Below, in pieces: positions 1 to 24,263 of a DNA stretch of 64,000 nt. The notes beneath the pieces are model-generated. The model was given only the letters and a program-made list of their open reading frames with translations. It did not search any database and had not been told where the DNA came from. The stretch's first letter is position 1. The number at the start of each line of letters is the position of its first letter. Location of the stretch: IMG/VR virus record IMGVR_UViG_3300017963_000192, positions 1-64,000 of that record, one strand, 5' to 3'. A program made the position numbers and the translations under genes.

Positions 1-141
1 GACTTGATCTGAAAATCGAAACAGCGGACAACAGCACCTTTCCAAAACAGGTCTTAATATAAAAATCATACTTGACATTTAAAGATACTTACAGTAAAAT
101 TTATCCACAGCAGTAGTCCTGCTTCGGAAAGCTGCGGGACG
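1..141 (+). mobile_element. 3' part of an attC-like integron recombination site (start lies outside the window)
   Basis: Ends in hairpin GTCCTGC..GCGGGAC followed by core site G|TTGTGC at 141. Resembles long spirochaete-type attC ends (recalled, not searched). Confidence 0.55.
72..100 (+). promoter_or_regulatory. sigma70-type promoter pointing into the cassette
   Basis: TTGACA (72-77), 17-bp spacer, TAAAAT (95-100). Confidence 0.65.
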
Positions 142-170
142 TTGTGCGCAATTTCGAGCAAAAACTTAAA

Positions 171-193
171 AAGCCGCACGTCCTGTGCGGCTT
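171..193 (-). terminator. intrinsic terminator after vsr
   Basis: Perfect 9-bp stem AAGCCGCAC/GTGCGGCTT, followed by a T-rich run on the minus strand. Confidence 0.7.
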
Positions 194-572
194 ATTGATC
201 AAATATATTATCTAAAACCATTTTCTTCAATTTTTTTAATTTATTTTCATTTATTTCACATTCCCAAATAATTAAAACATTCCAACCAAGTTTTTTTAAT
301 TCTTTTTTATTTCTTTTATCTCTTTCAATATTTTTTTGAAATTTATCTTCCCAATATTTACTATTAGTGGCTGGCATTGATGCTCTTTTACAATTTTTAT
401 GCCTATGCCAAAAACAACCATGAACAAATATAATAGTATTATATTTTTTTAATACAATATCAGGTTTTCCTGGTAAATTTTCTACATTTATTCTAAACCT
501 AAAACCTTCGCCATGTAACCATTTCCTAACAAGTTTTTCCGGTGTTGTGTTTGAAGAAGGTACTTTTGACAT
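192..572 (-). CDS. vsr: very-short-patch repair endonuclease; natural start probably 607, out of frame at an A10 tract
   Basis: TTPEKLVRKWL, LPGKPDIV, IFVHGCFWHRH, GWNVLIIWEC motifs. Confidence 0.95.
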   Translation of the reverse strand: MSKVPSSNTTPEKLVRKWLHGEGFRFRINVENLPGKPDIVLKKYNTIIFVHGCFWHRHKNCKRASMPATNSKYWEDKFQKNIERDKRNKKELKKLGWNVLIIWECEINENKLKKLKKMVLDNIFDQ

Positions 573-609
573 AATTTCCCTTCTTTTTTTTTTGAAAATT
601 TATCCATTA

Positions 610-858
610 TTACTTAGTAAATTCTTTGTAAAGTAATACTGACCGTTTTAACTGTGATTTAACTGAAGGTGAAAGCTCTTTAAATTTGTCATTACTTGAG
701 ACATCAAATATTATTTTATCAATAGATTTATTAAAGTTTACATTAAATAAACTTGAAACACGTTTTAATCTTGATAAAACATCTCTTGCGGATTTAATTT
801 CAAACCCTTTTTCATCGATTAACCATTCTTGAAAATTTGATTTGTCTTTCTCATCCAT
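610..858 (-). CDS. small helical protein of the C5-MTase operon
   Basis: 82 aa, abuts both the MTase stop and the vsr start. Confidence 0.7.
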   Translation of the reverse strand: MDEKDKSNFQEWLIDEKGFEIKSARDVLSRLKRVSSLFNVNFNKSIDKIIFDVSSNDKFKELSPSVKSQLKRSVLLYKEFTK

Positions 859-1779
859 TTATTTTGCCTTTTTAAAAATTATTGTATTTTGCATATCTAT
901 ATATTCATTTATACACTTTGCAATAAATTCAGCCATTTTGACAGGTACTGCATTCCCTATCATTTGCTCTAATTCCGTTTTGCTACCTTCCCAATAAAAA
1001 TCTTTTGGAAATGTCTGAATTCTTGCTCTTTCAATAGTTGTTAAAGGCCTTAATTTGCTTGATTTTTTTATTGGGTCACCGGGATGTCCAGGATAACCTT
1101 TAGGGACAGGCCTATTTACACCTCGTATTGTTGGCGAAGGCTCATCAATTGAAAATATTCCCCTCCTATTGTAGTTCCTAGGATGACGATAAAAATATTC
1201 AATATCAAGTTCTTCTCCAAAATAATCTCTTACAGTCATAGGTTTTGTTGAGAGGTTGTTTTGTATTATTTCATCTAAAAATCCATCTTCTGCATTTTTA
1301 ACACCCACGCAGAAAAATCTTTTTCTTTTTTGTGGAACACCACAATAACTTGAATCAATAACCTTTTCTGTCAGCCCATAATACGATTCTTTAAATATTT
1401 TTCTAGCCTTTATATAACTATTACTCTTAACAATTCTATCCACATTTTCCATTACAAACCACTCTGGCTTGACCTCTTGAATTATCTTTGCAAAAGATAT
1501 AGTTAAATCAGCTCTATCGCCCTCTTTTCTCTTCCCGGCATGTGAAAAATCTTGACATGGAGGTCCACCAATGATTATAAAAGGTTTATGTTTTGAAATA
1601 ATTTTCGCAGAATTTTCATGATTCGATAAATCAATATCTGAAATATCATGTTTAAAGTTAGTTTTATATATATTTATTGCTTTTTCCCAGTTATCAAATG
1701 CATGAGCAACATTAAAACCTTCATTCATAAATCCCAAGGACATTCCACCACAGCCAGCAAAGATATCTATTGTTTTCAT
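859..1779 (-). CDS. C5-cytosine DNA methyltransferase, M.HgiDI-like (predicted GRCGYC)
   Basis: Motifs FAGCGG, GGPPCQDFS, ENV, QxRxR, GNAV. TRD YRHPRNYNRRGIFSIDEPSPTIRGVNRP resembles M.HgiDI from memory. Start set at MKTID. Confidence 0.92.
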   Translation of the reverse strand: MKTIDIFAGCGGMSLGFMNEGFNVAHAFDNWEKAINIYKTNFKHDISDIDLSNHENSAKIISKHKPFIIIGGPPCQDFSHAGKRKEGDRADLTISFAKIIQEVKPEWFVMENVDRIVKSNSYIKARKIFKESYYGLTEKVIDSSYCGVPQKRKRFFCVGVKNAEDGFLDEIIQNNLSTKPMTVRDYFGEELDIEYFYRHPRNYNRRGIFSIDEPSPTIRGVNRPVPKGYPGHPGDPIKKSSKLRPLTTIERARIQTFPKDFYWEGSKTELEQMIGNAVPVKMAEFIAKCINEYIDMQNTIIFKKAK

Positions 1780-1807
1780 ATATTTCTTCCGATATTTAAT
1801 ATATGAC

Positions 1808-1857
1808 ATAATAATCATATTACAACAATGACGTCAAGTATTTGACGCCTTTATTAT
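1808..1857. promoter_or_regulatory. divergent M/R promoter region containing two GRCGYC sites
   Basis: Minus-strand TTGACG(1837-1832)-18-TATTAT(1813-1808); GACGTC at 1830-1835; GACGCC at 1844-1849. Confidence 0.6.
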
Positions 1858-1878
1858 AAAATTTTGAGGTGTTTTTTT

Positions 1879-2928
1879 ATGCCAGAAGAACCTAGCCTTT
1901 ACGGAATAATTAATTCAAATCGAACAGGGGATGATCTTTGGGGAAAAAATCAATTTAATAGTTCATTCCCTGTTTCTTTGGCATGCTACATGAGAGACAA
2001 TGACATTAATGCTATATATTTATCTTTGAATGAAAATCTTGAAGTTGTTGCAAATGAACTACATTTTAATGAAGTTTTTAATACATCTTTAGACTCAAAT
2101 GATATATATTTTTCTTTTGAATCAAAATTTGATCCGTATCAAGTTTATTCGTACGATGATATTTCAGGAATTGATCTTGTTGTTAAAGATACTTCAGGCA
2201 ACTTTTTACAACCACTGGAAATTAAATTAACCGTAATACCTGATAATAGTACATATCAAAACAATGAAAGTGAATGGGGTTCAGAAATTGTAATTAGACC
2301 TCCTACTACAAAATATTGTGGCTTAGGCATGGTACATTCCTGTATAAATCAATTAGAGGAAATAAGAAATATATTTGAACCTGTTTGCCATGATGTAAGA
2401 CACTGGGACAGTATTCCCGAAATAAATTCAAAGATGGATGATTTTATTGATGCATTAAATATTTTTGAAAGTCAGTATATTCAATTTCAAAAACCATTAT
2501 TATTACAGCCAATATGGAAAACGCAAGGTAAAAGCCCTTTATTAGCAGAGAATGCATTTGATATTTTTGTATGGAGTGATTTTGCTTTAAGCAGACTTTT
2601 TATTGATGCTTCAAACAATAGAAATGATAATGTAACTCGCTTGATGAGAAGTACTGCTCGTTTAACAAGATTTCTTTATGAAATAAGTACACGTAGAATT
2701 ACTCATTTGAATCATATTTACACAGAAATGACATTCGGTCATCAAACTGATAAAGAATTTTCAGTGAATGGTTCAAAAACTGTTCCATATATGAATCATG
2801 TTAGACGTTTCAATCCCATATTACCCCAAAGTGTTCTTTCTAATATTATTCTTGGTGGTGGTGAAGAAAAATTAAGTCCTGAAAGAAGATTTGACCAAAC
2901 GATATACTATACAATTGCAAATAGATAG
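1879..2928 (+). CDS. type II restriction endonuclease, HindVP/HgiDI-like
   Basis: SNR..LWGKNQFNSSFP, EIKLTVIPD, QPIWKT and LSPERRFD motifs; SD GAGGTG at 1866; divergent from the C5 MTase. Confidence 0.8.
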   Translation: MPEEPSLYGIINSNRTGDDLWGKNQFNSSFPVSLACYMRDNDINAIYLSLNENLEVVANELHFNEVFNTSLDSNDIYFSFESKFDPYQVYSYDDISGIDLVVKDTSGNFLQPLEIKLTVIPDNSTYQNNESEWGSEIVIRPPTTKYCGLGMVHSCINQLEEIRNIFEPVCHDVRHWDSIPEINSKMDDFIDALNIFESQYIQFQKPLLLQPIWKTQGKSPLLAENAFDIFVWSDFALSRLFIDASNNRNDNVTRLMRSTARLTRFLYEISTRRITHLNHIYTEMTFGHQTDKEFSVNGSKTVPYMNHVRRFNPILPQSVLSNIILGGGEEKLSPERRFDQTIYYTIANR

Positions 2929-2991
2929 TTTTTCAATCAGCCTCCGCCCTCCTTGGCTCCGGCTGACTAAATGTAAGAAGCTCGAAACTGC

Positions 2992-3070
2992 GCACAACAC
3001 GGCGTAATGCGTTGCGCTCCCTGCGGTCGCTTGGGCTTCACCACATTTTCACCTCCGCTATCGCTACGGT
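2992..3070 (+). mobile_element. 5' part of an attC-like site, truncated
   Basis: Starts GCACAAC (R''), then GC-rich CGCTCCCTGCGGTCGCTTGGGCTTCACCACATTT. No matching R' found downstream. Confidence 0.55.
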
Positions 3071-3916
3071 ATAATTTGTTATAATTAATTCATTGCCAAT
3101 TTTTCTGGTACCATTTTTACAATTTGAAGTATTATATAACCATGAACGCTCATATATCTGTGCCCAGTTGTATAGATCTCTAATTTCAGGACAGTCATCA
3201 TATGATAAGCAGAAATAAAAACTTGTTTTTTTTAAAATATTTGCTAAGCGATGGTGATCATTTTCCACGAAAGATTTTTGATATGCTCGTTTTTGGTCTG
3301 CATGATAGTACGGTGGGTCTAAATATATCAATACACTTTTACCTTTTTGAGGAGTGTTTATAACATACTCAAAATCTAAACTAGTAAGCTCAACATTATG
3401 AAGTTTGTTGCCAGCATTTTCAATAAATTTACCCCAATTTTGAGGCGGAGAGCTTTTACCTTCTTTATAACCCCAAGCCGGCTTATGTATAATGCCTGAG
3501 TATGAGGTACGATTTAAATAATAAATTTTAAATGCGTTTTCAAGTAATGATTCCGGTGAAAAATTTTTTATTTCGGCATGCCTTTCTTTTGTAGCAATTT
3601 CTTTTGAAATTAACTTCTGAAGTTTATGACGATTATCATTGCAAGCAATAATATTATAAACATCTATTATATCTTTATCAATATCATTGAGCCAATTATA
3701 TTGTGATTTATTTTTCCCAAAAAAAATATTTCCACCACCTACAAACGGTTCTCTAAATTCGTCATGTGGGACACAATTAATGAAAGGTAGAATATATTTA
3801 AGAGCATAAAATTTACCCCCTGGATATCTAAAAGGTGATGCAACAAAATCGCTTGACTTAATGTAACTACCATCAGAATCAAATTCGATTATATTATTGT
3901 GAAATATTTTATTCAT
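3038..3916 (-). CDS. D12-class (Dam family) N6-adenine DNA methyltransferase
   Basis: RYPGGK, EPFVGGG, NDID, LNRTSYSG, YLDPPY, ELIITNY. Confidence 0.92.
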   Translation of the reverse strand: MNKIFHNNIIEFDSDGSYIKSSDFVASPFRYPGGKFYALKYILPFINCVPHDEFREPFVGGGNIFFGKNKSQYNWLNDIDKDIIDVYNIIACNDNRHKLQKLISKEIATKERHAEIKNFSPESLLENAFKIYYLNRTSYSGIIHKPAWGYKEGKSSPPQNWGKFIENAGNKLHNVELTSLDFEYVINTPQKGKSVLIYLDPPYYHADQKRAYQKSFVENDHHRLANILKKTSFYFCLSYDDCPEIRDLYNWAQIYERSWLYNTSNCKNGTRKIGNELIITNYTVAIAEVKMW

Positions 3917-3936
3917 GAAAAAGCCTGTTATCGTTA

Positions 3937-4740
3937 TTATATTTCATAATTGGTGATAATTAATTCAAAGCCTAATCTTCTTTTTCCCTTTTGAATATGT
4001 GAATTGTCAACTCTATAGAAAAAATTAGCCTCATGTATATTTGCCCATTTGTACATATCTCTTACTTCAGGAACATCATCATATGTTAAGAAAAAACTAT
4101 ATTTTGTTTCTTTTAATAGGGATAATAGTCTGTAGTGATCGTCAATGCTAAAACCATTCCTATAATGTTTGTTTTTTGGTGGAGAAAAATATGGAGGATC
4201 AACATATAATAAAACTTTTGAAGTATTAGTTTGCTTTTTAATTACTTTTTCAAAATCATAGTTTGTCAATTTAATATTTTCAAGTTTTTCACCACAAGGT
4301 ATGATTCTTTCATGCCATCTTTCAGGTGGTAAACTTCTTTTAGGTCTATAACCCCAAGCAGCTGAGGCAAGTTTGCCGCTAAATGATGTCCTATTTAAAT
4401 AATAATATTTGAATGCAATTTCCATTTCATTATTTGGGTTGAAATCATATATTTCTTTCCATCTTTCTTTTGATGCAATTTCTTGAGATAATTGATTGAT
4501 TAATTTTGTTCTTTTATTTGGATCGCTCATTATTTTAAAAGTAGTGATTAATTCATTATCAATATCATTGAGCCAATTTTGATTAGATTTAGGTTTATTG
4601 AAAAAAACAGAACCTCCACCTACAAACGGTTCTCTGTATTCTTCGTGTAAAATATTGCTCCAAAAAGGTCTTAAAATATTCAATGCATAATATTTTCCAC
4701 CAGGATATCTTAATGGTATTGGATGTCTTTTAAGTGTCAT
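3937..4740 (-). CDS. second D12-class N6-adenine DNA methyltransferase
   Basis: Same motifs with YVDPPY. Start set at MTLKRHP after SD AAAGGA; upstream TTGACA-16-TACATT. Confidence 0.92.
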   Translation of the reverse strand: MTLKRHPIPLRYPGGKYYALNILRPFWSNILHEEYREPFVGGGSVFFNKPKSNQNWLNDIDNELITTFKIMSDPNKRTKLINQLSQEIASKERWKEIYDFNPNNEMEIAFKYYYLNRTSFSGKLASAAWGYRPKRSLPPERWHERIIPCGEKLENIKLTNYDFEKVIKKQTNTSKVLLYVDPPYFSPPKNKHYRNGFSIDDHYRLLSLLKETKYSFFLTYDDVPEVRDMYKWANIHEANFFYRVDNSHIQKGKRRLGFELIITNYEI

Positions 4741-4811
4741 AATCTTATCCTTTTCAATACGTAACAAATGTATAGCTGTATGAAAAATTGTCAAGTAAAA
4801 AATTCCATTTA

Positions 4812-4988
4812 TTATAACATAACTACTTCTGAATACATACAGTTTTCTTTGCAAAACTTTGTTTGTTTTATTGTTTCATTGTTTTGTAAAGCTAACTCCT
4901 TTTTTGATATAGAACAATTAATAAAAATACATAATGATAAAATAATAATTTTTTTCCTTTTATTTTCCTTTACGATTTGTGTCTTCAT
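4812..4988 (-). CDS. 58-aa putative lipoprotein (not in the ORF track)
   Basis: Hand translation MKTQIVKENKRKKIIILSLCIFINCSISKK...: basic N-region, hydrophobic core, lipobox-like IFINC. Confidence 0.4.
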   Translation of the reverse strand: MKTQIVKENKRKKIIILSLCIFINCSISKKELALQNNETIKQTKFCKENCMYSEVVML

Positions 4989-4993
4989 TTTAT

Positions 4994-5263
4994 TTAATGT
5001 TTAAAGTCTTTTGTTTCATTTTTATTTAAAAGTTCACTAGATACTGCTATATAATTGAGAATAATATTAGCCATTGCTCCTCTATTGCTTTCACAAATTT
5101 TCATTAATTCTCCCATTAGTGAAAATACATCGTTTTTTATCATAGCTTCTTTTATTAAAGCCTCACCTTTTTCTATCTCTTCACCAGTAACATTTAAAGA
5201 TTCCAAAATTCTAAAATAGTTTTCCTCTTTTTTTGTTTTTATCCTATTGTTTTTATTCCCCAA
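4994..5263 (-). CDS. hypothetical phage protein
   Basis: Tightly packed minus-strand ORF. Confidence 0.55.
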   Translation of the reverse strand: MGNKNNRIKTKKEENYFRILESLNVTGEEIEKGEALIKEAMIKNDVFSLMGELMKICESNRGAMANIILNYIAVSSELLNKNETKDFKH

Positions 5264-12651: not shown

Positions 12652-13758
12652 CTATGATAGTTTATCCTTTATCTTTTTTGTCAAATCATTCATTCTTTTT
12701 TTAACTGTTTCTTGAGTTTTCTTTGCTTTTGGATATAAACCATCAACATAATCCTTTGCCAATTTCTTAACTTTTTTACTACCCTCTAATACTTTTGGTA
12801 ATTTAGGAAGATAAGATTTGTCCTCTTCTTTCATTAAATCTTTATAATTATTTACATTAGTTTTTTTCAAACGAGTATGCCTTCCTCTAACTTCTGAAAC
12901 TAATTTCTGAAGAAGTTCTTCATCCATCTCTTCAAGAGTATCCAATTCATACTCCGCATCGTCTTTTTTAATAGTATCAACAAACTTATCTAAAGTTAAG
13001 TCACAATACTCATCTATCCAATCAACTATAAAATAAAGTTTGTCTGGCATATATTCTTGAACACCAAAACAAATAGGATCTTTTTCTTTAATCTTTTCCT
13101 TATTTGTTTTTAGTTTCTTCTCTTTTTTCTTTGTGCCGTCAACATCTGTCTTTTCTTTATAGTTGAGATACAATACCCAGATTTCATCAAAAAGTTTAAG
13201 CTTTTTAAATCTATCTATTCTTTTTTTGACGTTTGTAGGTATAGGTCTATCATAATGCTCAATCTTACTAAAGCCTATTTCAACATCTTTAACCTTATCT
13301 CTATACTTGTTAACAACAGATTTATCAACGAAATATTCAACACCACAAACCCCAAGTTCTTGCTCTCTTACAATTATAGCAATCTTTCTAGACAATTCCT
13401 CGTACAATGCTGTTTGACCTAAATCTTTGGCTTGTACAACTAACTTTTGAAGTTTAAGCAGTCTTTCATTAAGAAGTCTCTGCTCTAATTTTGAGAGTTT
13501 AGATTTTACGAATTTAAAGTAAAGTCTTGGGTGTATGACTTTCTTATTGTTCACCTTTTCTTCTGCCATATCGAAATGAATCTGTGTTCCGACATCCGTT
13601 ATATAATTACTATATGTTGAAGATGTCCAGGCAATGATTGCAGCAGAAGAATTCTGAATATAAAAAGTATCTCCTGTACCAGCAGAAAGACCAGTAATAC
13701 TAGAAGTCCCAGTATCATAATAAGTACCTTGAGTACTATCAGTTGTTGCCCAAGCCAT
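12652..13758 (-). CDS. conserved large-phage hypothetical protein
   Basis: KDPICFG..LYFIVDWIDEYCDLTLD motif; S/T/G-rich N-terminus. Confidence 0.7.
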   Translation of the reverse strand: MAWATTDSTQGTYYDTGTSSITGLSAGTGDTFYIQNSSAAIIAWTSSTYSNYITDVGTQIHFDMAEEKVNNKKVIHPRLYFKFVKSKLSKLEQRLLNERLLKLQKLVVQAKDLGQTALYEELSRKIAIIVREQELGVCGVEYFVDKSVVNKYRDKVKDVEIGFSKIEHYDRPIPTNVKKRIDRFKKLKLFDEIWVLYLNYKEKTDVDGTKKKEKKLKTNKEKIKEKDPICFGVQEYMPDKLYFIVDWIDEYCDLTLDKFVDTIKKDDAEYELDTLEEMDEELLQKLVSEVRGRHTRLKKTNVNNYKDLMKEEDKSYLPKLPKVLEGSKKVKKLAKDYVDGLYPKAKKTQETVKKRMNDLTKKIKDKLS

Positions 13759-17776: not shown

Positions 17777-17794
17777 TTATTCCTCCAATAAATG

Positions 17795-17868
17795 TGACTC
17801 CACTGAGAATCGAACTCAGTACCTCGACCTTAAAAGGGTCTTGCTGCTACCAATTGAGCTATGGAGTC
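17795..17868 (-). tRNA. trnK: tRNA-Lys(UUU) copy 1
   Basis: Acceptor GACTCCA/TGGAGTC, loop CTTTTAA, T-arm CTGAG TTCGATT CTCAG. Confidence 0.85.
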
Positions 17869-17874
17869 ATTATG

Positions 17875-17949
17875 TGCCAAGGGGCAGAATCGAACTGCCG
17901 ACACACGGATTTTCAGTCCGCTGCTCTACCGAAATTGAGCTACCTTGAC
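17875..17949 (-). tRNA. trnF: tRNA-Phe(GAA)
   Basis: GCGGA CTGAAAA TCCGT; full cloverleaf. Confidence 0.92.
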
Positions 17950-17955
17950 ATAATG

Positions 17956-18453
17956 TTATCTTTCAAATTCTCCTATTATTTCATATTTATCCTTATCTAT
18001 TTTTATATTTTTCCTATAAAAGCGATAAAACATTCCATGTAGAAAATAAGGTCTAAGTTTGTGTTCTGTTATATGCCTGTCTATGGGACGCTTATTATTT
18101 TCATCATAATCTGTATGCGTTCCTACGTACTTTCTAAAGTATTCGTGTTGTCTATCAAGTTGTTTTAAAAGTTTTTCTGGTATTCTATACACTTTATAAA
18201 ACCACTGGTATTCGTAATCAAAGAGTTCACCCTCTTCAAACTCCCATCCTTCTCTTTCGCAAACTTGTCTCCACTCTTCTTTCTCTTCCTTATTAAACGG
18301 TATTTCATGTACAATTTCTTTATCAAATGCAAAATAAACTCTCTCTCCTTCCCACAACATAATTCCTGTTAATGGACCATCCCAGTAAGCTAGATGGTAC
18401 AGAAATCTCGTTTGTCCATTAGTTTCTTTTGTTAGTTCATCAAGAGTTTTCAT
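17956..18453 (-). CDS. hypothetical phage protein
   Basis: 165 aa; YWDGPLTG motif. Confidence 0.65.
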   Translation of the reverse strand: MKTLDELTKETNGQTRFLYHLAYWDGPLTGIMLWEGERVYFAFDKEIVHEIPFNKEEKEEWRQVCEREGWEFEEGELFDYEYQWFYKVYRIPEKLLKQLDRQHEYFRKYVGTHTDYDENNKRPIDRHITEHKLRPYFLHGMFYRFYRKNIKIDKDKYEIIGEFER

Positions 18454-18456
18454 TTT

Positions 18457-18756
18457 TTATCCTGCATATTTCATTTTATCTCTGTATTCCTCTAAAATAG
18501 AAATTAACTTTTCTACCCCTTTTTTCTTTAGTACAAAAGCATCCGAATACGGGGAACCATAGGTCAGTATTCTCCATATTTGCCTTAACCTATTTCTTAA
18601 ACTTGGTTTACCAGTTATATTCCCATATTGATAAACTGAAAAATACAATAGAGATGGTTTCCCTTCTATTTCGAAATCCTCATCAAGAACTATTTGAATA
18701 AGTTCTGTATGACAATCACATTCAATATATTTTGGTTCAAACATTTGACAACTCAT
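18457..18756 (-). CDS. hypothetical phage protein
   Basis: 99 aa; SD AAGGAGG. Confidence 0.65.
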   Translation of the reverse strand: MSCQMFEPKYIECDCHTELIQIVLDEDFEIEGKPSLLYFSVYQYGNITGKPSLRNRLRQIWRILTYGSPYSDAFVLKKKGVEKLISILEEYRDKMKYAG

Positions 18757-18774
18757 ATCTATAACCTCCTTATG

Positions 18775-18848
18775 TGCGTCCTCTGAGAATCGAACTCAGT
18801 ACCTCGACCTTAAAAGGGTCTTGCTGCTACCAATTGAGCTATGGACGC
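18775..18848 (-). tRNA. trnK: tRNA-Lys(UUU) copy 2 (different acceptor stem)
   Basis: Body identical to copy 1; acceptor GCGTCCA/AGGACGC. Confidence 0.8.
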
Positions 18849-19083
18849 TTTAATAATCTAATAGAAAAACTTAATTCAAACTTGATAAGTTTTAATTTCA
18901 AGACCCATCCTAAAGTTTTAGATTCTATCCAAGTTTCAATACCGATATTAAATATAAAATCTTTATAGATTCCAGCAAATAATAAAATGTGTTCTCCATC
19001 AATTAAAGGATTTCTTGTTTTGTATGTAAAGAATCTCTTACTTTTACATTTGTACCATATGTCATTCATATTAATCTCCTATT

Positions 19084-19156
19084 TCCGCTCGACCGGAATC
19101 GAACCGATTGCCTCTCAGTTATCAGCCGAGTGCTCTACCTATTGAGCTACGAGCGG
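19084..19156 (-). tRNA. trnI: tRNA-Ile(GAU)
   Basis: CTCGG CTGATAA CTGAG. Confidence 0.9.
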
Positions 19157-19335
19157 TTAAGCAACATATTTTATATTTTTTCTCAAATCATAAAATATTG
19201 CAAACTGTAACCATCTAAAACAACCTATTTTCCACCCGTATGTTTTGAGTTTAGGAATTACTTCAAATCTGTATAACAGTATCCCTGGTACAGTATTCTT
19301 TGCTAATCCAATATTAATTATCATAGTTCCTCCTT

Positions 19336-19411
19336 TGGCGAGAGTGGGAGTCGAACCCACAGATTACAGAGTTTTTGGGACTCCAGCCTTTTCCAATTTA
19401 GCCATCTCGCC
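19336..19411 (-). tRNA. trnL: atypical tRNA-Leu(CAA): C33, 7-nt variable region
   Basis: GGAGT CCCAAAA ACTCT; Leu-type D-arm; A73. Confidence 0.6.
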
Positions 19412-19769
19412 TTAATTTGTTTCTTTTTGCTTGGTATGATCTATGACCTTCTCTACAAAGATCACATCTACATCCATGAGCATATTTGCTATGTGTTCCA
19501 TGATTTTCTTTTTTAAGTAAATTATGATGATAGTCACTATGACATTTTCTACACCATACAACACATTTTTTTAATTCTTTTTCTCTTCTCTCTTCAGACC
19601 AAGACCATATTTTATGATCTTCCTTTTCCTTTGGATTTTTATGATGTAATTCCAACTTTTCTATCGAACCACATTTTTCACATACTTTGTCTTTAAAAAA
19701 TTCTAATCTTCTTTTCCTTACCCATAATTTAGCATATTCTCTTTGTTTGTTAACATCCTTATAAGACAT
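19398..19769 (-). CDS. free-standing HNH endonuclease
   Basis: CEKCGS..LELHHK..CVVWCRKCH; C-terminal HGT..Y..GCRCDLC. Confidence 0.85.
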   Translation of the reverse strand: MSYKDVNKQREYAKLWVRKRRLEFFKDKVCEKCGSIEKLELHHKNPKEKEDHKIWSWSEERREKELKKCVVWCRKCHSDYHHNLLKKENHGTHSKYAHGCRCDLCREGHRSYQAKRNKLRRDG

Positions 19770-19790
19770 ACTAATACTCCTTCAATTAAT

Positions 19791-19872
19791 TAGGAGCGAA
19801 GGGAGTTGAACCCTTACACCTTTCGGCATTGGAGCTTAAATCCAATGTGTCTACCAGTTCCACCACGCTCCC
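19791..19872 (-). tRNA. trnL: tRNA-Leu(UAA)
   Basis: TTGGA TTTAAGC TCCAA, long variable arm. Confidence 0.92.
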
Positions 19873-19877
19873 ATATG

Positions 19878-19956
19878 TGCCCCACCTCCGATTCGAACGG
19901 AGACGCTTACGCACAGGGCCTAAACCTGTTGACTAGACCAATTCGTCTAATGGGGC
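19878..19956 (-). tRNA. trnL: tRNA-Leu(UAG)
   Basis: ACAGG TTTAGGC CCTGT, variable arm GCGTAAGCGT. Confidence 0.88.
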
Positions 19957-20063
19957 TTACTTAATTTTAAAAGACCTCTACATTCAGGACATTGCCAAGA
20001 ATGTACAATATCAGTCATTATTTCAAAGACCTTTAAACATTTAAAACATACAAATCTTTTCAT
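19947..20063 (-). CDS. 38-aa Zn-ribbon peptide (not in the ORF track)
   Basis: MKRFVCFKC..WQCPECRG, SD GGAGAGG. Confidence 0.5.
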   Translation of the reverse strand: MKRFVCFKCLKVFEIMTDIVHSWQCPECRGLLKLSKPH

Positions 20064-20078
20064 ATACCTCTCCTTATT

Positions 20079-20154
20079 TCCCCATGACAGGATTCGAACC
20101 TGTAAAGATTTAGTCCCTCAAACTAACGCCTCTACCAGATCGGGCTACATGGGG
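20079..20154 (-). tRNA. trnL: tRNA-Leu(GAG) with 6-nt variable region
   Basis: TTAGT TTGAGGG ACTAA; acceptor CCCCATG/CATGGGG. Confidence 0.75.
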
Positions 20155-20160
20155 TTTTAT

Positions 20161-20553
20161 TTAATTTCTTATAACAACTTGCCTGCCAAACCATGTTTTA
20201 AGAGGGTCAAATCCTCCTTTTATTAAAGTTTCTACATAACCCTGACTTCTTCGTACTTCATCATATTCTTTTCTTTCTTGTTCTTCTCTGTCATTTAATT
20301 CTTGTTGTTCATCTTCCAATTCAACTTCTTTATATATCATATCGAGGTCCATTTCAACAATTTCATTTATTTCATAAAGTTCGGCGTGTTCAAGCTGATT
20401 ATCTCCAGTATAATATTCTTTAATAACTTTGATAAGTTCTACTTTAGCAGATTCTAGTGTTTTTGAATCCAAGTCAATAACATTAAGTCCACATCCTATT
20501 GTGTAATCACATCCTTCCGCTTCTTGAACTATGTGTGCCTTATAAACTTTCAT
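20161..20553 (-). CDS. hypothetical phage protein
   Basis: 130 aa, acidic. Confidence 0.6.
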   Translation of the reverse strand: MKVYKAHIVQEAEGCDYTIGCGLNVIDLDSKTLESAKVELIKVIKEYYTGDNQLEHAELYEINEIVEMDLDMIYKEVELEDEQQELNDREEQERKEYDEVRRSQGYVETLIKGGFDPLKTWFGRQVVIRN

Positions 20554-21251
20554 TTTATTTATCCCCCTTTCTATTCTCTCTTAACTCTATGCAAATAGAG
20601 CTATTACACTCTTCTCCAAAATTAACTTTGCAATCGCATACGCTACATCTCCAACCCTTAATATATTCATTTATTTCGAAAAATTCTAAATCTACACCTG
20701 TAGCTTTCATCTCTTACTTCCTTCAAATATATTTAATGACCTTCTAATGCCAATCTAATTAAATCCCCTTTAACTGTTTTCATTATACCTTCCTTATGGT
20801 TGAATCACTTCATCTTCTTTCAACTCTTTAATATCTTTATCGAATTCTCCATTAGCAAACTTTTGAAGCACTTCAAGATTATCAAGAACCGCTTTAACTT
20901 TATTCTTGCTGAGATTAAATCCACCTCTATAGAAATTCCCTTTAATCTTTACCATTGGAACTCCAGAGCCAAGTTTAGGAAGACCTTCCTTATCTTTTGG
21001 GACAAATTTGTAGAAGTGTTCGATGGTACTTGGTATTACTTCTTCGCCAGTTTCATCTTTTTCTAATTTAACTTTCTTCATTTCAATCTCCTTTTTTAAT
21101 TTTTTCTTTAAATTTTTCCAGTCTTTCTTTACTCTTTTTTTTAGCTTCTTCGCTTCTTTCTTTAAGAAGACCTTTCTTTGTAACATTAGATAGTATATAA
21201 TCTTGGATATCTATTTTATCTTTCTTCATCTTAATCTCCTTAATTTTAATG

Positions 21252-21324
21252 CGGGGCTGACGAGTTTTGATCTCGCTACCTCTTGCGTGACAGGCAAGCA
21301 CTCTCCCAATTGAGCTACAGCCAC
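21252..21324 (-). tRNA. trnD: tRNA-Asp(GUC), degenerate T-loop
   Basis: CTTGC CTGTCAC GCAAG; G73; T-loop ATCAAAA; 2:71 mismatch. Confidence 0.75.
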
Positions 21325-21360
21325 CATAAAAGTTATACCACAGCCCCATTATAAATTAGA

Positions 21361-21717
21361 TTATCTTTCATCTTTTTCCAAACCCAAGCATTGCTTTAAG
21401 TAAGCTGCTAAATCTGCATCTTCTTCATTAGCCTCTTCTTTGTATTCTTCTAGTAGTTCTATAATTCTTTCTTTTAATGATTGGAATTTGAATTCTTTCT
21501 TTTTGCCTGGTTCTAAATGAACATTATACCAGTTATCCCTCATTTTTGTAGCTTGGTCAAACGCATCTAAAGCATTTAATAGATACTCTGCTAAAATGTG
21601 GTCTGGTGTGTTACTGCCATTCTCTGCACTTGAAATATTAATTGCTTCCTTAATTTTCTCTCTTAAATCCATACATACCTCCCTTACTCCTTGTTCTTTT
21701 TTATAAATTTTATACAT
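21361..21717 (-). CDS. hypothetical phage protein
   Basis: NGSNTPDHILAEYL..RDNWY motif. Confidence 0.6.
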   Translation of the reverse strand: MYKIYKKEQGVREVCMDLREKIKEAINISSAENGSNTPDHILAEYLLNALDAFDQATKMRDNWYNVHLEPGKKKEFKFQSLKERIIELLEEYKEEANEEDADLAAYLKQCLGLEKDER

Positions 21718-22203
21718 TCTTGAAAACCTGCAACAAAGTATGATTGTTCAGTTGCAGTCATATTTAATTTATCACTTATCTTTATTGCAATGATTCCAGC
21801 TTCTTCTATATTTGGTAATAAATTATCTAACGTATCCATTTATCTTTACTCCTTTTGTGTATTGATATCCTTCATTTCATTTCTCTTTATAAGTTATTTT
21901 ATTTAAATATATCTTTTAATATTTAAATTTATACCTCTCATATTTATTAAAATCACAATAATATGCATCACCATCTTCCCATACCCACGTTTTTAGATGA
22001 TTACATTGCCCTTCCCCTTTTCTTACGATGCAACTCGTAGGACCAAGTATATTTAAGCAGAAATCTACTCCCATTATCACATCATATAAAGGGCAATAGG
22101 TAGGATGGGCTGATTTAGCATTTTCACTTGTTATCATAACAATTCTATTTATTTTACCAGTACCTTTACAATTAAGCATCTCCCTTACTCCTTGTTCTTT
22201 TTT
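21679..22203. repeat. 24-bp direct repeat containing two SD motifs (21679-21702, 22180-22203)
   Basis: Minus strand AAAAAAGAACAAGGAGTAAGGGAG, followed closely by ATG in both copies. Confidence 0.75.
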
Positions 22204-22476
22204 TATCTGGTCTTGTAACCAAAAATAGAGCTTATCTATGGTGAACTTTTCATTATAGAACGGAAGTGTTACTTCCCAATCAATCTTCTTTTCTGAAAGA
22301 TATTCAATCATATATCCAACAAGCATCCTTTCATCCAGTTCAATCTCCCCATAACTCCCCATTCCAGCTACAATAGATATCCCTTCTTCTGACAGTTCTA
22401 TTTGTTTGTATCCTTTAGTTTCTTCTCCATATATGGTGTTGTTGTTTTCTCTCATCCAATTCCAAAATTCTTTCAT
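21916..22476 (-). CDS. hypothetical protein, probably a fusion of two small genes
   Basis: Internal SD repeat and ATG at 22179 (MLNCKG..). Confidence 0.55.
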   Translation of the reverse strand: MKEFWNWMRENNNTIYGEETKGYKQIELSEEGISIVAGMGSYGEIELDERMLVGYMIEYLSEKKIDWEVTLPFYNEKFTIDKLYFWLQDQIKKEQGVREMLNCKGTGKINRIVMITSENAKSAHPTYCPLYDVIMGVDFCLNILGPTSCIVRKGEGQCNHLKTWVWEDGDAYYCDFNKYERYKFKY

Positions 22477-22505
22477 ACTCCCCCTCTACCGACAAACATA
22501 ATTAT

Positions 22506-22595
22506 TTGAACTAACATAGCCTAAAGGCTATGGATTCCTGATCTGAGCTTATTACATCTACACTCATATCTCTCAAACTGTTTCACAGTTTCGCT
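22506..22595 (-). mobile_element. orphan IS200/IS605 (tnpB)-type right end / omegaRNA-like remnant
   Basis: GGAATC CATAGCC TTTA GGCTATG T TAGTTCAA; upstream hairpin AAACTG TGAAA CAGTTT; no transposase or tnpB nearby. Confidence 0.6.
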
Positions 22596-22618
22596 TATTC
22601 TCCATAAGTTAAGTGAAA

Positions 22619-23293
22619 TTACTCGCTTAATTCTTCTATGCTATAAATTTCCATATCTTCATATTTATCAGGCTTCAACCCAGAAGATGTTAAAGCGTTC
22701 CATAAAGCTTCTGCTTCAATTTCTAATTCTTTTCTTGATGTACTTTCACTCTCAAAAATAAATCTGTATTCTTCTTGAGGTTCATCAACACGCATCAGTT
22801 CTTCAACTTCATCGTCTATTTTATAGCCCTTTCTCTCCAGCATTTCTGCTAAATCAGAAAGTTTACTAAAAAATTGTTTCATCGTTCCCGCAGTTTTCGT
22901 TACTTGTTCAGAGGTTAGCCCTAGTTCTTTTGCAATTTCTATTATTCTATTTCTATAAGGCTTGTATATTTCGTAGGCTTTTTTATATCTCTTTATCTTA
23001 TCTCTTAATTCTGTGTTTTCTTTAGAGAAATTGTCTATTATCTCGTTCTTTTCTTTTAATAACTCTTTGTATTTCTCTAATCTTTTCTTGCTTTTTAATT
23101 TACTCTCTTTATAACTTTCTTCTTTTATTTCTTCTATTTGTTTATAATGATTATCACAAATCTCTTTTATTTTATTTTCATAATATTCTCTTAACTCATC
23201 TTCTTTTTCTTTATAAATCTTCTCAACTTTTGTTTTTTGAGCACTTAAAATCTTATCAAGTTTTTCTTTAGTCATCCGATAAGTTTTCGACAT
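22619..23293 (-). CDS. coiled-coil hypothetical protein
   Basis: 224 aa, K/E-rich heptads; SD AAGGAG. Confidence 0.7.
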   Translation of the reverse strand: MSKTYRMTKEKLDKILSAQKTKVEKIYKEKEDELREYYENKIKEICDNHYKQIEEIKEESYKESKLKSKKRLEKYKELLKEKNEIIDNFSKENTELRDKIKRYKKAYEIYKPYRNRIIEIAKELGLTSEQVTKTAGTMKQFFSKLSDLAEMLERKGYKIDDEVEELMRVDEPQEEYRFIFESESTSRKELEIEAEALWNALTSSGLKPDKYEDMEIYSIEELSE

Positions 23294-23368
23294 ATTCTTA
23301 TCTCCTTAATATAACATTAATAATTATATAAAAATATGTCTCATTTAAAGTCAATAAAAAAATACAAT

Positions 23369-23439
23369 TTGCGGGTGACAGAATTGAACTGTCCTGGGCG
23401 GCTTATGAGACCGTTGAGTAACCACTACTCTAACCCGCA
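23369..23439 (-). tRNA. trnM: tRNA-Met(CAU), initiator-like
   Basis: ACGGT CTCATAA GCCGC; fMet-like GCGGG acceptor, A11:U24, TTCAA T-loop; lacks the 3 G-C anticodon pairs. Confidence 0.75.
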
Positions 23440-23442
23440 ATG

Positions 23443-23716
23443 TGTCAGTTTCTAATAGTGAGGATTCATCGGGTAGCTAATCCCTCCACCACACGTTCGG
23501 CTTCACTGACAAGCTCGGTTGCACAGAGGAGTCCTGTTTAGGACACTGGTGTCCGTCCTCTCTTTACCTATAAAGGGTTAATTTAAAAGTTTTTGATATC
23601 GCTGTGCCAACGATAAAAGAGTTATATAGTACCCTATTTCTCTTGAATATTCAATGACTCTAGTTGTCTCAGTTCCTTTCGGTCACTGTTTAGAATATTC
23701 TGCTATATAACCCAAG
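23443..23716 (-). ncRNA. unidentified multi-domain structured RNA
   Basis: Several long stems, a kink-turn motif and no ORF; see findings. Confidence 0.6.
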
Positions 23717-23719
23717 ATG

Positions 23720-23771
23720 AAGAGGCGGAAAGGATCGAAAACCCATTGTACTGCCATTGTACTACGCCTCT
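23720..23771 (-). pseudogene. internally deleted tRNA (Gln-like)
   Basis: Acceptor AGAGGCG/CGCCTCT and D-arm GTAC AATGGCA GTAC intact; anticodon-to-T-arm segment reduced to 19 nt. Confidence 0.65.
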
Positions 23772-23953
23772 ATATTATTTAATTTCTCAATAATTTCCTT
23801 TTTGTTTTCTACAATTACTTGTGATAATTTTAATATCCCATAAAAACCTAATCTGTCTAAATCATTATGGTAATTTCTATAAAGCTTGTCAAGAAATTTA
23901 GCGAATTCTTTGTCTTTATCGCTAAAGAAATACTCCCAATTTTGTTTACTCAT
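23762..23953 (-). CDS. hypothetical phage protein
   Basis: 63 aa, SD GGGGG. Confidence 0.55.
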   Translation of the reverse strand: MSKQNWEYFFSDKDKEFAKFLDKLYRNYHNDLDRLGFYGILKLSQVIVENKKEIIEKLNNIEA

Positions 23954-23967
23954 AAAAACCCCCTATT

Positions 23968-24040
23968 TGACGCTAGGGGGAGTTGAACCCGCCATTACAG
24001 AGTTGAAAGCCCTGTGGCCTAACCATTAGCCGATAGCGCC
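23968..24040 (-). tRNA. trnE: tRNA-Glu(UUC)
   Basis: CAGGG CTTTCAA CTCTG. Confidence 0.88.
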
Positions 24041-24045
24041 TTATG

Positions 24046-24117
24046 TGGAGCCGAGGGGAATCGAACCCTCGTCTTTTTGCTTGCAAAGCAAACGCCTTCC
24101 CAGTTGGCTACGACCCC
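24046..24117 (-). tRNA. trnA: tRNA-Ala(UGC)
   Basis: TTTGC TTTGCAA GCAAA; G3:U70. Confidence 0.92.
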
Positions 24118-24178
24118 ATAAATAATGTTATTGTTGAATTTAAGTCAATGAATTTTTTATAATTATTAATAAAAAATG

Positions 24179-24263
24179 TAGGTCAGGAGGGATTCGAACC
24201 CCCATCGGTTTTACCCTACACTTCATTAGCAGTGAAGCCTCTTACCAGTTAGAGTACCTTTCC
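24179..24263 (-). tRNA. trnS: tRNA-Ser(GCU) with non-matching 3' acceptor strand (chimera)
   Basis: CTTCA CTGCTAA TGAAG, long variable arm; 5' GGAAAGG vs 3' CTGACCT. Confidence 0.65.

What the first reader, a model, noticed from the sequence alone, without database searches (positions are those of the whole stretch)
141..3070. Integron-cassette-like R-M unit joined to phage genes in the middle of an attC site
Seen: vsr-orf-M(C5)-R is bracketed by an 18/19 inverted repeat with core GTT/AAC; attC-like sequence precedes it and restarts at 2992 but breaks at ~3070, where phage-style genes begin. No integrase is in the window. Inference: either a large phage captured an integron cassette array fragment, a prophage inserted into an attC, or the contig is chimeric.
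Basis: partly seen in the sequence, partly recalled or inferred. Interest (0 to 1): 0.7.

Follow-up and report, generated by a model that had tools for sequence, protein, structure and literature searches.

The report
Integron-type restriction-modification cassette in jumbo phage
A complete restriction-modification gene set sits in a giant phage genome as one of three mobile-looking cassettes separated by integron-like hairpin sites with no integrase nearby, a rare but already described way for phages to pick up DNA-modification and defence genes.

Summary
An 18/19 inverted repeat (141-159 / 2980-2998, outer ends GTT...AAC) brackets vsr, orf82, an m5C methylase and a HindVP-family endonuclease. 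GC-rich hairpin DNA flanks it and stops abruptly at 3070/3071.

The window is the first 64 kb of a 217.7-kb tailed-phage contig. Related assemblies continue past base 1, which abuts an IS21-family insertion. That explains the contig end.

These assemblies show a three-cassette array:
- a second R-M system (C protein, a 194-aa candidate endonuclease, an N4/N6 methylase);
- a single-gene cassette interrupted by the IS;
- this R-M unit.

The cassettes are separated by 110-122-nt hairpin sites running from AAC to GTT. Each R-M cassette has its own long terminal inverted repeat. Bona fide integron arrays show the same hallmark, only shorter (6-11 nt).

The last site is cut off after 72 nt (79 nt counting its AAC box) and fused to the 3' end of a phage Dam gene. 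Several assemblies share the junctions, so the contig is not chimeric.

Against full membership:
- no integrase in 217.7 kb;
- my home-made attC covariance models give only 8.9 bits (E 2.3);
- the spacer geometry is non-canonical.

The best reading is an integrase-less integron-type cassette cluster (CALIN) captured by a jumbo phage, like the methylase cassettes of Polaribacter phage P12002L.

The parts
1..13 (+). Tail of the middle cassette. Base 1 abuts the IS21-family insertion seen in relatives, so this is where the contig breaks.
   Evidence: L031 1-10572 equals window 10572-1. The IS inverted repeat TGCGTATTCCGG starts at the next base. L034, from the same metagenome, overlaps window 1-123 and then runs into the IS.
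14..32 (+). Extended R''-type arm of the middle cassette (AATCGAAACAGCGGACAAC). It matches the R-M cassette arm at 15 of 19 positions.
   Evidence: Read from the sequence. It lies in the same orientation as the arm at 2980-2998.
26..147 (+). attC-like site 'b' (122 nt). Layout: GGACAAC, then A, then L'' GCACCTTTCC, an AT-rich centre, L' GGAAAGCTGC, GGGAC, then GTTGTGC.
   Evidence: Recovered by an AAC...GTT hairpin scan that also recovers true attC sites. The bottom strand folds at -18.9 kcal/mol (z -4.0) against -9.7 kcal/mol (z -0.4) for the top strand. Neither covariance model detected it.
72..100 (+). Best sigma-70-like promoter match in 1-5000 (TTGACA-17-TAAAAT). It lies inside site b and points into the R-M cassette.
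   Evidence: 11 of 12 positions. Its function is not shown.
141..159 (+). Left arm of the inverted repeat. This is the start of the R-M cassette (G|TTGTGCGC...), an extended R' box.
171..193 (-). Intrinsic terminator after vsr.
   Evidence: 9-bp stem followed by a T run. Also seen in the fold.
192..572 (-). Vsr very-short-patch repair endonuclease.
   Evidence: PF03852 1.8e-25; TIGR00632 3.8e-38.
610..858 (-). orf82, function unknown. An ORF of the same size follows the methylase in one bacterial homologue of the unit.
   Evidence: No family in Pfam, NCBIfam or PHROGs. An 82-aa ORF sits downstream of M in L041; its sequence was not compared.
859..1818 (-). C5 cytosine DNA methylase (306-319 aa, depending on the start codon).
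   Evidence: PF00145 2.5e-67 covering the full profile; TIGR00675.
1830..1849 (.). Palindromic M-R intergenic element holding two GRCGYC sites (1830, 1844). Candidate control region.
   Evidence: The GRCGYC specificity of the HindVP family is taken from the family description, not tested here.
1864..2928 (+). HindVP-family Type II restriction endonuclease, full length.
   Evidence: PF09519 1.2e-100 covering profile positions 1-327 of 332. More than 3,000 homologues; the best non-self hit is 65% identical.
2937..2966 (+). GC-rich hairpin after the R gene (TCAGCC...GGCTGA). A related hairpin sits at the matching place in the second R-M cassette.
2980..2998 (+). Right arm of the inverted repeat. 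This is the cassette's own extended R'' box, ending in AAC.
2992..3070 (+). Truncated attC-like site 'a'. It comprises R'' GCACAAC, AC, L'' GGCGTAATGCG and the centre up to GCTACGGT. The 3' 31 nt, including L', GGGGAC and GTT, are missing.
   Evidence: 94.7% identical over 75 nt to the full 110-nt copy in L031/L034. The full copy continues GAAAACGTCGCATACGCCGGGGACGTT. Logan unitigs break here, with summed depth 27 against 10.
3038..3916 (-). Dam-b, a D12-class N6-adenine methylase. Its last 10 codons and its stop codon lie in the truncated site.
   Evidence: PF02086 1.2e-25. It is 292 aa here and 327 aa in relatives, where TGA reads CGA. Its paralogue ends two codons after the point of fusion.
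3937..4854 (-). Dam-a, tandem paralogue of Dam-b (74-80% nucleotide identity in blocks).
   Evidence: PF02086 4.5e-27; repeats D1-D4.

Best explanation
Window 141-2998 is a 2.86-kb integron-type gene cassette carrying a self-contained Type II restriction-modification system: an m5C methylase, orf82 and Vsr on one strand, and a HindVP-family endonuclease on the other, with terminator hairpins at both ends.

The 18/19 inverted repeat is the cassette's own R'/R'' pair. The cassette begins at G|TT and ends in an AAC box complementary to its own start. All integron cassettes do this, but here the pairing is about twice as long.

It is the last of three cassettes in an integrase-less array of the CALIN type inside a jumbo tailed phage of roughly 235 kb or more. 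In window orientation the array reads:
1. phage DNA ...TATATATA;
2. G|TT, then cassette 1 (C protein, a 194-aa candidate endonuclease, an N4/N6 methylase);
3. site a (110 nt);
4. cassette 2 (a single ORF, interrupted by an IS21-family element);
5. site b (122 nt);
6. cassette 3 (this R-M unit);
7. site a', truncated after 72 nt and fused to the 3' end of the phage Dam-b gene.

Inferred history, not shown: the cassettes were moved by an integron integrase supplied in trans by a host, entering the phage at a G|WT secondary site. A later deletion removed the end of the last site together with the last codons of Dam-b. The IS21 insertion, plus a 73-nt adjacent deletion in one variant, came after that.

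Inferred function, not shown: the R-M systems protect phage DNA, act against co-infecting phages or host DNA, and behave as addictive modules.
For: 1. The inverted repeat is real and not due to chance.

2. Relatives extend the locus and show the array with conserved boundaries. Every cassette starts GTT and ends AAC. The 5' flank of each GTT is GGGAC or GGGGAC, and the 3' flank of each AAC is AC or A followed by an L'' stem.

3. The second R-M cassette has its own, different terminal inverted repeat, 22/23 (GTTAGGCGAARGACTTTGCCCCC).

4. Control on true integrons. In the Vibrio and Shewanella phage-borne integrons, every cassette start is complementary to its own R'' for a perfect run of 6-11 nt. 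The neighbouring cassette start matches for only 4-6 nt, with one exception between duplicated cassettes.

5. Site a has a canonical L box: 5 bp, one extrahelical base, then 3 bp (GGCGT-A-ATG / CAT-ACGCC). The extra base lies on the 5' half, as in the true sites.

6. A 17-nt stretch, CGCTCCCTGCGGTCGCT, is identical to a Shewanella integron attC at the same position after L''.

7. Model R2, built from 18 real attC sites, aligns site a end to end, from GCCTAAC to GTTGTAC. The orientation is the one that the single-ORF cassette independently favours.

8. Folding: site a z -3.0 and -3.2. For site b the bottom strand is much more stable than the top.

9. An independent sample (run X3) holds four contigs with the same core. 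At least three have different R'' boxes (ATATAAC twice, GCCCAAC) and variant L'' sequences, so this is a family of sites in different contexts.

10. Polaribacter phage P12002L, a published phage CALIN, has a methylase cassette bracketed by GTTAGGCAC...GTGCCTAAC and a site with the same asymmetric 3x6 spacer.

11. Assembly is sound. At least four assemblies (two JGI, two ENA) plus Logan unitigs share the junctions. Unitigs cross 2998/2999 and 3070/3071 at depth 10-11.

12. Phage identity: baseplate wedge, virion structural protein (1.7e-104), large terminase and 13 tRNA genes. Phage-type COOH.NH2 ligases lie on the far side of the array.
Against: - No tyrosine recombinase in the 217.7-kb record, and none among the called genes of the further 15 kb.
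- Model R1 gives no hit even with filters off.
- The R2 score for site a is only 8.9 bits, E 2.3 in 16.5 kb, and a trivial mini-hairpin scores higher. Site b is not detected.
- The unpaired spacer is 2x6 (site a) or 1x5 (site b), not the 3x3 of the true sites used here.
- In the integrated site a, the R''/R' pair matches at only 4 of 7 positions.
- The cassettes are large (2.4-2.9 kb), hold several genes and carry their own terminators.
- The 19-23-nt arms are longer than in any true cassette examined.
- No donor integron was found. The best endonuclease homologue is 65% identical, and site a has no match in cultured phages or plasmids.
- Only assembled contigs, not raw reads, were available. 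No excised circle or empty site could be looked for.
Confidence: 0.65

Rival explanations
1. A separate hairpin-bounded module system that resembles integrons but is not part of them. On this reading, phages exchange methylase and R-M modules through conserved GC-rich hairpins. The agent would be a recombinase other than IntI, or homologous or template-switch recombination at the shared hairpins, as proposed for the promoter-stem-loop cassettes of T4-type phages (recalled from the literature).
For: - No integrase, and the covariance models do not reach significance.
- The spacer geometry is shared with P12002L_attC1, the one phage site that IntI1 failed to recombine in Qi et al..
- The central hairpin (CACC-TCCGCTATCGCTACGG-GTG) also occurs alone in an unrelated AT-rich viral contig.
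- The arms are much longer than in true cassettes.
Against: - The AAC/GTT boundaries, the own-cassette complementarity, the L box with its extrahelical base and the 17-nt identity with a Shewanella attC are exactly the integron logic.
- No candidate alternative recombinase was found next to the array.
Confidence: 0.2
2. A non-autonomous transposon. On this reading the 19-bp arms are terminal inverted repeats mobilised by a transposase, for example the adjacent IS21-family element or the transposase at 12652-13758.
For: - Terminal inverted repeats flank the cargo.
- An IS21-family element lies 140 nt away in relatives.
Against: - There is no target-site duplication (left flank GGGAC, right flank ACGGC).
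- The IS21 ends are unrelated (TGCGTATTCCGG with TGCCACCC repeats).
- The second R-M cassette has different arms that share only the GTT/AAC ends. One transposase would need similar ends.
Confidence: 0.05
3. An invertible segment. A site-specific invertase would flip the R-M unit between the two arms to switch expression from the outside promoter at 72-100.
For: - Inverted repeats flank a unit with divergent operons.
- A strong promoter-like site points inward.
Against: - All assemblies show one orientation, and no strand-changing joints were seen.
- No tyrosine invertase was found; serine invertases were not specifically searched.
- Terminators sit inside both arms.
- The neighbouring cassette has different arms.
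Confidence: 0.03
4. An assembly chimera, or a prophage-host junction. On this reading the R-M unit and the GC-rich DNA belong to a bacterium and are joined to phage DNA only in silico or at a prophage end.
For: - The unit lies at a contig end.
- IMG/VR labels the relative G001 a 'provirus' trimmed exactly at the vsr stop.
- Logan unitigs break inside 2976-3070.
Against: - Independent assemblies give identical junctions.
- A unitig starting at 3041 crosses 3070/3071 at the phage's depth.
- The repeat is only 72-95 nt, and the two copies differ at 4 positions.
- DNA beyond the array is again AT-rich with phage-type genes.
- The contig end is explained by the IS.
Confidence: 0.03

Closest known systems
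CALINs (clusters of attC sites lacking an integrase) in phage genomes, especially Polaribacter phage P12002L (Qi et al. 2023, PMC9892861)
   Same: - An integrase-less array in an AT-rich virulent-type phage.
- The cargo is DNA methylases, encoded opposite to the site orientation.
- Each cassette is bracketed by its own GTT...AAC repeat (GTTAGGCAC...GTGCCTAAC around gp35).
- The site has R'' GCCTAAC, a short 5' spacer and a 6-nt 3' spacer.
   Different: - Here the cassettes carry complete R-M systems including endonucleases, and are 2.4-2.9 kb.
- The arms are 19-23 nt rather than 9.
- The sites are 110-122 nt with a branched centre.
- An IS21-family element has invaded the array.
- The host genome is a jumbo phage.
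- P12002L sites were called by HattCI/Infernal. Ours were not significant with my models.
Canonical integron gene cassettes and attC sites (for example the sedentary arrays of Vibrio and Shewanella carried by phages Va_90-11-286_p16 and M16-3)
   Same: - The crossover-type boundary G|TT.
- An R'' ending in AAC and complementary to the cassette's own start.
- An L box of 5 bp, an extrahelical base, then 3 bp.
- Site length of 57-141 nt.
- Near-identical sites within one array.
- A shared central motif.
   Different: - No intI, attI or Pc promoter.
- Spacer 2x6 instead of 3x3.
- Weak covariance-model score.
- Multi-gene cassettes with their own promoters and terminators.
Defence systems, including R-M, carried as integron cassettes in bacterial chromosomal and mobile integrons (bioRxiv 10.1101/2024.07.02.601686 and 10.1101/2024.07.02.601719; R-M cassettes as noted in Qi et al. 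2023)
   Same: A compact, self-contained defence module packaged as a cassette.
   Different: Those cassettes lie in bacterial integrons with an integrase. Here the array lies in a phage, next to phage methylases.
R-M gene pairs of large dsDNA viruses and phages (chlorella viruses, phage P1; from general knowledge)
   Same: A virus carries both the methylase and the endonuclease, plausibly to degrade unmodified competitor or host DNA.
   Different: Those are not known to be packaged between attC-like sites.

Membership tests
Integron gene cassette / attC site (CALIN) | The cassette boundary lies at G|TT of an R' box, and the site starts with an R'' box ending in AAC | tested here: met
   All three cassettes start GTT (GTTAGGC, GTTGTAC, GTTGTGC) and end AAC (GCCTAAC, GGACAAC, GCACAAC). 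Only one pair fits RYYYAAC/GTTRRRY perfectly.
Integron gene cassette / attC site (CALIN) | The cassette start is complementary to the R'' of its own site, not to that of its neighbour | tested here: met
   18/19 and 22/23 for the two R-M cassettes, 8/9 for the middle one. In true arrays the own-cassette perfect run is 6-11 nt, against 4-6 nt for the neighbour, with one exception between duplicated cassettes.
Integron gene cassette / attC site (CALIN) | An L''/L' stem with an extrahelical base, and an imperfect palindrome 57-141 nt long | tested here: met
   Site a has GGCGT-A-ATG / CAT-ACGCC, is 110 nt long and folds with z about -3. Site b is 122 nt and has a mismatch instead of a bulge.
Integron gene cassette / attC site (CALIN) | Canonical spacing between the R and L boxes (about 5-nt spacers; 3x3 unpaired in the true sites aligned here) | tested here: not met
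   2x6 in site a and 1x5 in site b. P12002L_attC1 has 3x6.
Integron gene cassette / attC site (CALIN) | A significant match to an attC covariance model | tested here: inconclusive
   Home-made models only. R1 gave nothing. R2 gave 8.9 bits, E 2.3, full length with correct ends and orientation. Both models recover untrained true sites at E of 0.15 or better; one training site, P12002L_attC1, scores only 18.9 bits. IntegronFinder's own model was not available.
Integron gene cassette / attC site (CALIN) | An integron integrase (intI) and attI beside the array. This is required for a complete integron but not for a CALIN. | tested here: not met
   No PF00589 in 217.7 kb. None among the called genes on the far side.
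Integron gene cassette / attC site (CALIN) | IntI-dependent recombination of the folded bottom strand | not testable with these tools
   This needs an attC x attI assay. Only assembled contigs were available, so excision products could not be sought.
Type II restriction-modification system, HindVP family | A cognate methylase and endonuclease, adjacent and intact | tested here: met
   PF00145 covers profile 1-322 of 324 and PF09519 covers 1-327 of 332. The same divergent M/R arrangement occurs in bacterial homologues. The specificity (GRCGYC expected) and the activity were not tested.
IS21 family insertion sequence (in relatives, abutting window base 1) | An IstA DDE transposase plus an IstB ATPase, ends of TG...CA with repeated subterminal sites, and a 4-8-bp target duplication | tested here: inconclusive
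   - IstA: rve plus Mu-transpos_C_2.
- IstB: PF01695, 4.5e-62.
- A homologue is named an IS21 family transposase.
- 12-bp inverted repeat TGCGTATTCCGG, plus 3 to 4 TGCCACCC repeats.
- No target duplication was found. A 73-nt adjacent deletion variant exists.

The most novel reading that the evidence does not exclude
The GC-rich hairpin sites may be a distinct class of recombination site. It would share ancestry and logic with attC, but have long cassette-specific arms, an asymmetric spacer and a conserved inner hairpin. Phages of AT-rich hosts would use such sites to trade whole restriction-modification and methylase modules, served by a recombinase that is not a classical IntI or is a very divergent one.
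Probability: 0.17. Interest if true: 0.75.

Novelty: new member of a known kind. Interest (0 to 1): 0.5.

Why it matters
Integrons are now seen as stores of anti-phage defence genes, and a few phages are known to carry integrase-less cassette clusters, mostly holding orphan methylases.

In this case a jumbo phage carries two complete restriction-modification systems, endonucleases included, each packaged as a cassette next to the phage's own methylases. That would be direct evidence that defence modules move from bacterial cassette pools into viruses. There they could be turned against competing phages or the host.

The sites are non-canonical and are shared with Polaribacter phage P12002L. 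They mark a class of sites that standard attC models may under-detect, so phage-borne cassette arrays may be commoner than surveys suggest.

Tried and rejected
- Exact 19-mer scans of metagenome and genome collections gave 10 and 8 hits. Apart from the window's own contig, their flanks are unrelated, and the number equals chance expectation (about 9 per 600 Gb by my estimate).
- Rfam: nothing near a gathering score in 1-5200.
- attC model R1, weighted towards Vibrio and Shewanella: no hit. A MAFFT alignment of short attC sites was too poor to model.
- Donor search. The best endonuclease homologue is 65% identical and lies in ordinary bacterial islands. The IS21 transposase is at most 69% identical to anything else, so it gives no host clue.
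- Site a has no match in 50,697 phage records. The one match in 72,556 plasmids is a chance hit.
- Empty-site relatives: the search for related loci with Dam-b and with the 152-aa flank protein found only the same lineage or nothing.
- Closing the genome. The far end of the record ends in a 12-nt tandem repeat and does not join the array. A look-up of the last protein found nothing.
- Reads. Only Logan contigs were served, so excision circles, empty sites and inversion could not be tested. The listed 'joints' have sides of 20-25 nt in AT-rich DNA, and I disregard them.
- Pfam Terminase_6N and Gp23 found nothing in the genome. PHROGs did identify structural and packaging genes.
- I first placed the IS edge 10 nt off and inferred a native stop codon for the middle ORF. 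After correcting the coordinates I withdraw that claim.

Full report
**1. What is in the window**

Positions 1-5000 are AT-rich (about 30% GC), with two GC-rich islands at about 100-165 and 2932-3073.

Between the islands lie four genes:
- Vsr, 192-572 on the minus strand (PF03852, 1.8e-25);
- an 82-aa ORF with no family, 610-858(-);
- a C5 cytosine methylase, 859-1818(-) (PF00145, 2.5e-67);
- a divergently transcribed HindVP-family endonuclease, 1864-2928(+) (PF09519, 1.2e-100).

An intrinsic terminator follows vsr (193-171, minus strand), and a GC hairpin follows the endonuclease gene.

Its arms are 141-159 and 2980-2998, and 18 of 19 positions pair. There is no other match with up to 3 mismatches in 64 kb, and none in 100 shuffles.

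The two genes after 3070 are tandem paralogous Dam-type methylases at 3038-3916 and 3937-4854 (PF02086).

**2. Where the window lies**

The window is the first 64 kb of a 217,703-bp virus record, which CheckV estimates to be 88% complete. The record is a tailed phage. It has:
- a baseplate wedge protein;
- a virion structural protein (phrog_1645, 1.7e-104);
- a large terminase and a DnaB-like helicase;
- 13 tRNA genes.

So there is no upstream window, and the finding sits at a contig end.

**3. Relatives extend the locus**

A look-up of the exact Vsr protein found contigs from other assemblies that continue beyond window base 1. These are ENA k141_2598056 (234,748 bp), JGI Ga0309773_1000182 and a Logan contig.

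Base 1 abuts a 2,581-bp IS21-family element. Its features are:
- a 527-aa IstA with rve and Mu-transposase C-terminal domains;
- an IstB (PF01695, 4.5e-62);
- a 12-bp terminal repeat, TGCGTATTCCGG;
- repeated TGCCACCC motifs.

A 17-kb contig of the same metagenome as the window overlaps window 1-123 and then runs into the IS. One relative has the IS abutting window 74, a 73-nt adjacent deletion. The contig end is therefore explained by the IS.

**4. An array of three cassettes**

Beyond the IS lie:
- a 267-aa ORF with a weak, sub-threshold GIY-YIG hit, whose last 20 or so codons are IS-derived;
- a 110-nt GC-rich element;
- a second R-M system, made of an N6_N4 methylase, a 194-aa candidate endonuclease and an HTH_3 controller protein;
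- AT-rich DNA with phage-type COOH.NH2 ligases.

In window orientation the order is:
1. phage ...GGATATATATA
2. GTTAGGCGAAAGACTTTGCCCCC [C, 194 aa, methylase] GGGGGCAAAGTCCTTCGCCTAAC
3. site a (110 nt), ending ...GGGGAC
4. GTTGTACGC... [267-aa ORF, IS21] ...CGAAACAGCGGACAAC
5. site b (window 26-147), ending ...GCGGGAC
6. GTTGTGCGCAATTTCGAGC [vsr, orf82, M, R] GCTCGAAACTGCGCACAAC
7. site a', of which 72 nt follow the AAC, ending at 3070
8. the 3' end of Dam-b.

The second R-M cassette is bracketed by its own, different inverted repeat (22/23). The outer ends are again GTT...AAC.

**5. The break at 3070**

The truncated site a' is 94.7% identical over 75 nt to the full site a. The full site continues GAAAACGTCGCATACGCCGGGGACGTT, whereas the window switches to ATAATTTG....

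Homology to the paralogue Dam-a begins exactly at 3071. Dam-a ends two codons later. Dam-b instead reads 10 codons into the remnant, to a TGA at 3038-3040. In relatives that codon is CGA, and the ORF runs on to 327 aa.

**6. Is this integron logic?**

I fetched phage records with published integrons or CALINs (Qi et al. 2023, PMC9892861).

*Hairpin scan.* An AAC...GTT hairpin scan recovered their true sites. The same scan recovered site a (110 nt) and site b (122 nt) at comparable energy densities.

*Own-cassette complementarity.* In the true Vibrio and Shewanella arrays, every cassette start is complementary to its own R'' for a perfect run of 6-11 nt. The next cassette's start matches for only 4-6 nt, apart from one pair of duplicated cassettes.

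*L box.* Site a has the canonical L box of 5 bp, one extrahelical base and 3 bp. The extra base is on the 5' half, as in the aligned true sites.

*Shared motif.* Site a shares 17 identical nucleotides with a Shewanella attC at the homologous position.

*Folding.* Site a folds with z about -3 on both strands. The bottom strand of site b folds far better than the top.

**7. Covariance models**

- R1 was built from 18 true sites, mostly Vibrio and Shewanella. It recovers untrained true sites but does not hit our elements, even with filters off.
- R2 was built from Shewanella, TJE1 and P12002L sites. It aligns site a end to end in window orientation.
- The R2 score is only 8.9 bits, E 2.3 in 16.5 kb, and a trivial mini-hairpin scores higher. 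Site b is not found.
- R2 finds no other candidate in the rest of the genome.

The main structural departure is the unpaired spacer. It is 2x6 or 1x5 nt here, against 3x3 in the true sites.

Model support is therefore inconclusive, and I could not run the published model.

**8. A wider family**

Laying Logan contigs of an independent sample on 2930-3110 showed four different contigs with the same core. At least three have different upstream boxes, ATATAAC (two contigs) or GCCCAAC. These are followed by AC or CC and variant L'' sequences. The same 3' continuation as full site a is also seen.

The inner hairpin also occurs alone in an unrelated AT-rich viral contig.

In Polaribacter phage P12002L the methylase gp35 is bracketed by GTTAGGCAC...GTGCCTAAC. 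Its attC1 has R'' GCCTAAC and a 3x6 spacer. Qi et al. report that this one site was not recombined by IntI1.

**9. Integrase, and how the array got there**

There is no PF00589 match in the 217.7-kb record, and none among the genes called on the far side.

The left boundary...TATATATA G|TTAGGC, is compatible with integrase-mediated insertion at a G|WT genomic site (attG; bioRxiv 10.1101/2022.09.11.507474). The right boundary is a truncation, so it is not a site-specific product.

All of this history is inference.

**10. Assembly**

At least four assemblies (two JGI, two ENA) and Logan unitigs share the junctions. Other points:
- One unitig runs from the IS to 3005.
- Another starts at 3041 and crosses 3070/3071.
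- Depths are 10 and 11.
- The short variant unitigs between them, with summed depth 27, reflect the two copies of site a, which differ at 4 of 75 positions.

The contig is not chimeric.

**11. Verdict**

The best explanation is an integron-type R-M cassette within a decayed, integrase-less three-cassette array captured by a jumbo phage (confidence 0.65).

The main rival is a related but IntI-independent module system (0.2). The transposon, invertible-segment and artefact readings are unlikely.

The category is already published: phage CALINs with methylase cassettes. New here are the two complete R-M systems, the jumbo-phage setting, the long cassette-specific arms and the IS21 invasion.

Noticed in passing
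window 1830-1849; whole record G000: GRCGYC, the specificity expected for the HindVP family, occurs only 4 times in 217.7 kb. A third-order Markov model expects 23 +/- 5.5. Two of the four sites lie in the M-R intergenic palindrome of the cassette itself. GCGC (10 sites) and GGCC (26 sites) are also very rare.
   Followed up: partly
L031 10573-13153; L032: The IS21-family element has no target-site duplication. One population (JGI Ga0309773_1000182) has a 73-nt deletion next to it that removes half of site b. This suggests the IS has been active in the phage lineage.
   Followed up: partly
L038 925-960 (IMGVR_UViG_3300033146_002863): The inner hairpin of site a (CACCTCCGCTATCGCTACGG followed by GTGAAAAT) occurs alone in an intergenic region of an unrelated, very AT-rich 10-kb viral contig. 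Its role is unknown.
   Followed up: no
G000 217,650-217,703 (L012 5950-6000): The other end of the record stops inside a tandem repeat of the 12-mer CGCCTAAACCTT. This is a likely cause of the assembly break there.
   Followed up: no
window 17794-24263: A cluster of 13 tRNA genes, all on the minus strand, including four tRNA-Leu and two tRNA-Lys.
   Followed up: no
window 12652-13758 (-): A 368-aa ORF matches a PHROGs transposase family (phrog_10081, 2.8e-20). This is a second mobile-element gene within 13 kb of the array.
   Followed up: no
G000 196753-199770 and 187261-189795: The large terminase candidate is 1,005 aa. An 844-aa DnaB-like helicase also matches terminase families over its N-terminal half. 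These may reflect inteins or fused domains.
   Followed up: no
window 3001-3045 compared with L003/L031: The truncated site in this contig differs from relatives by three changes, all from C or G to T or A (GCGCGGCGC to GCGTTGCGC; TTCGCC to TTCACC). One of them creates the Dam-b stop codon. This is consistent with decay of a non-functional remnant.
   Followed up: partly
G001 (IMGVR_UViG_3300017971_007915): IMG/VR labels this relative a 'provirus' and trims it exactly at the vsr stop. The cassette array and the IS were probably mistaken for host DNA.
   Followed up: partly
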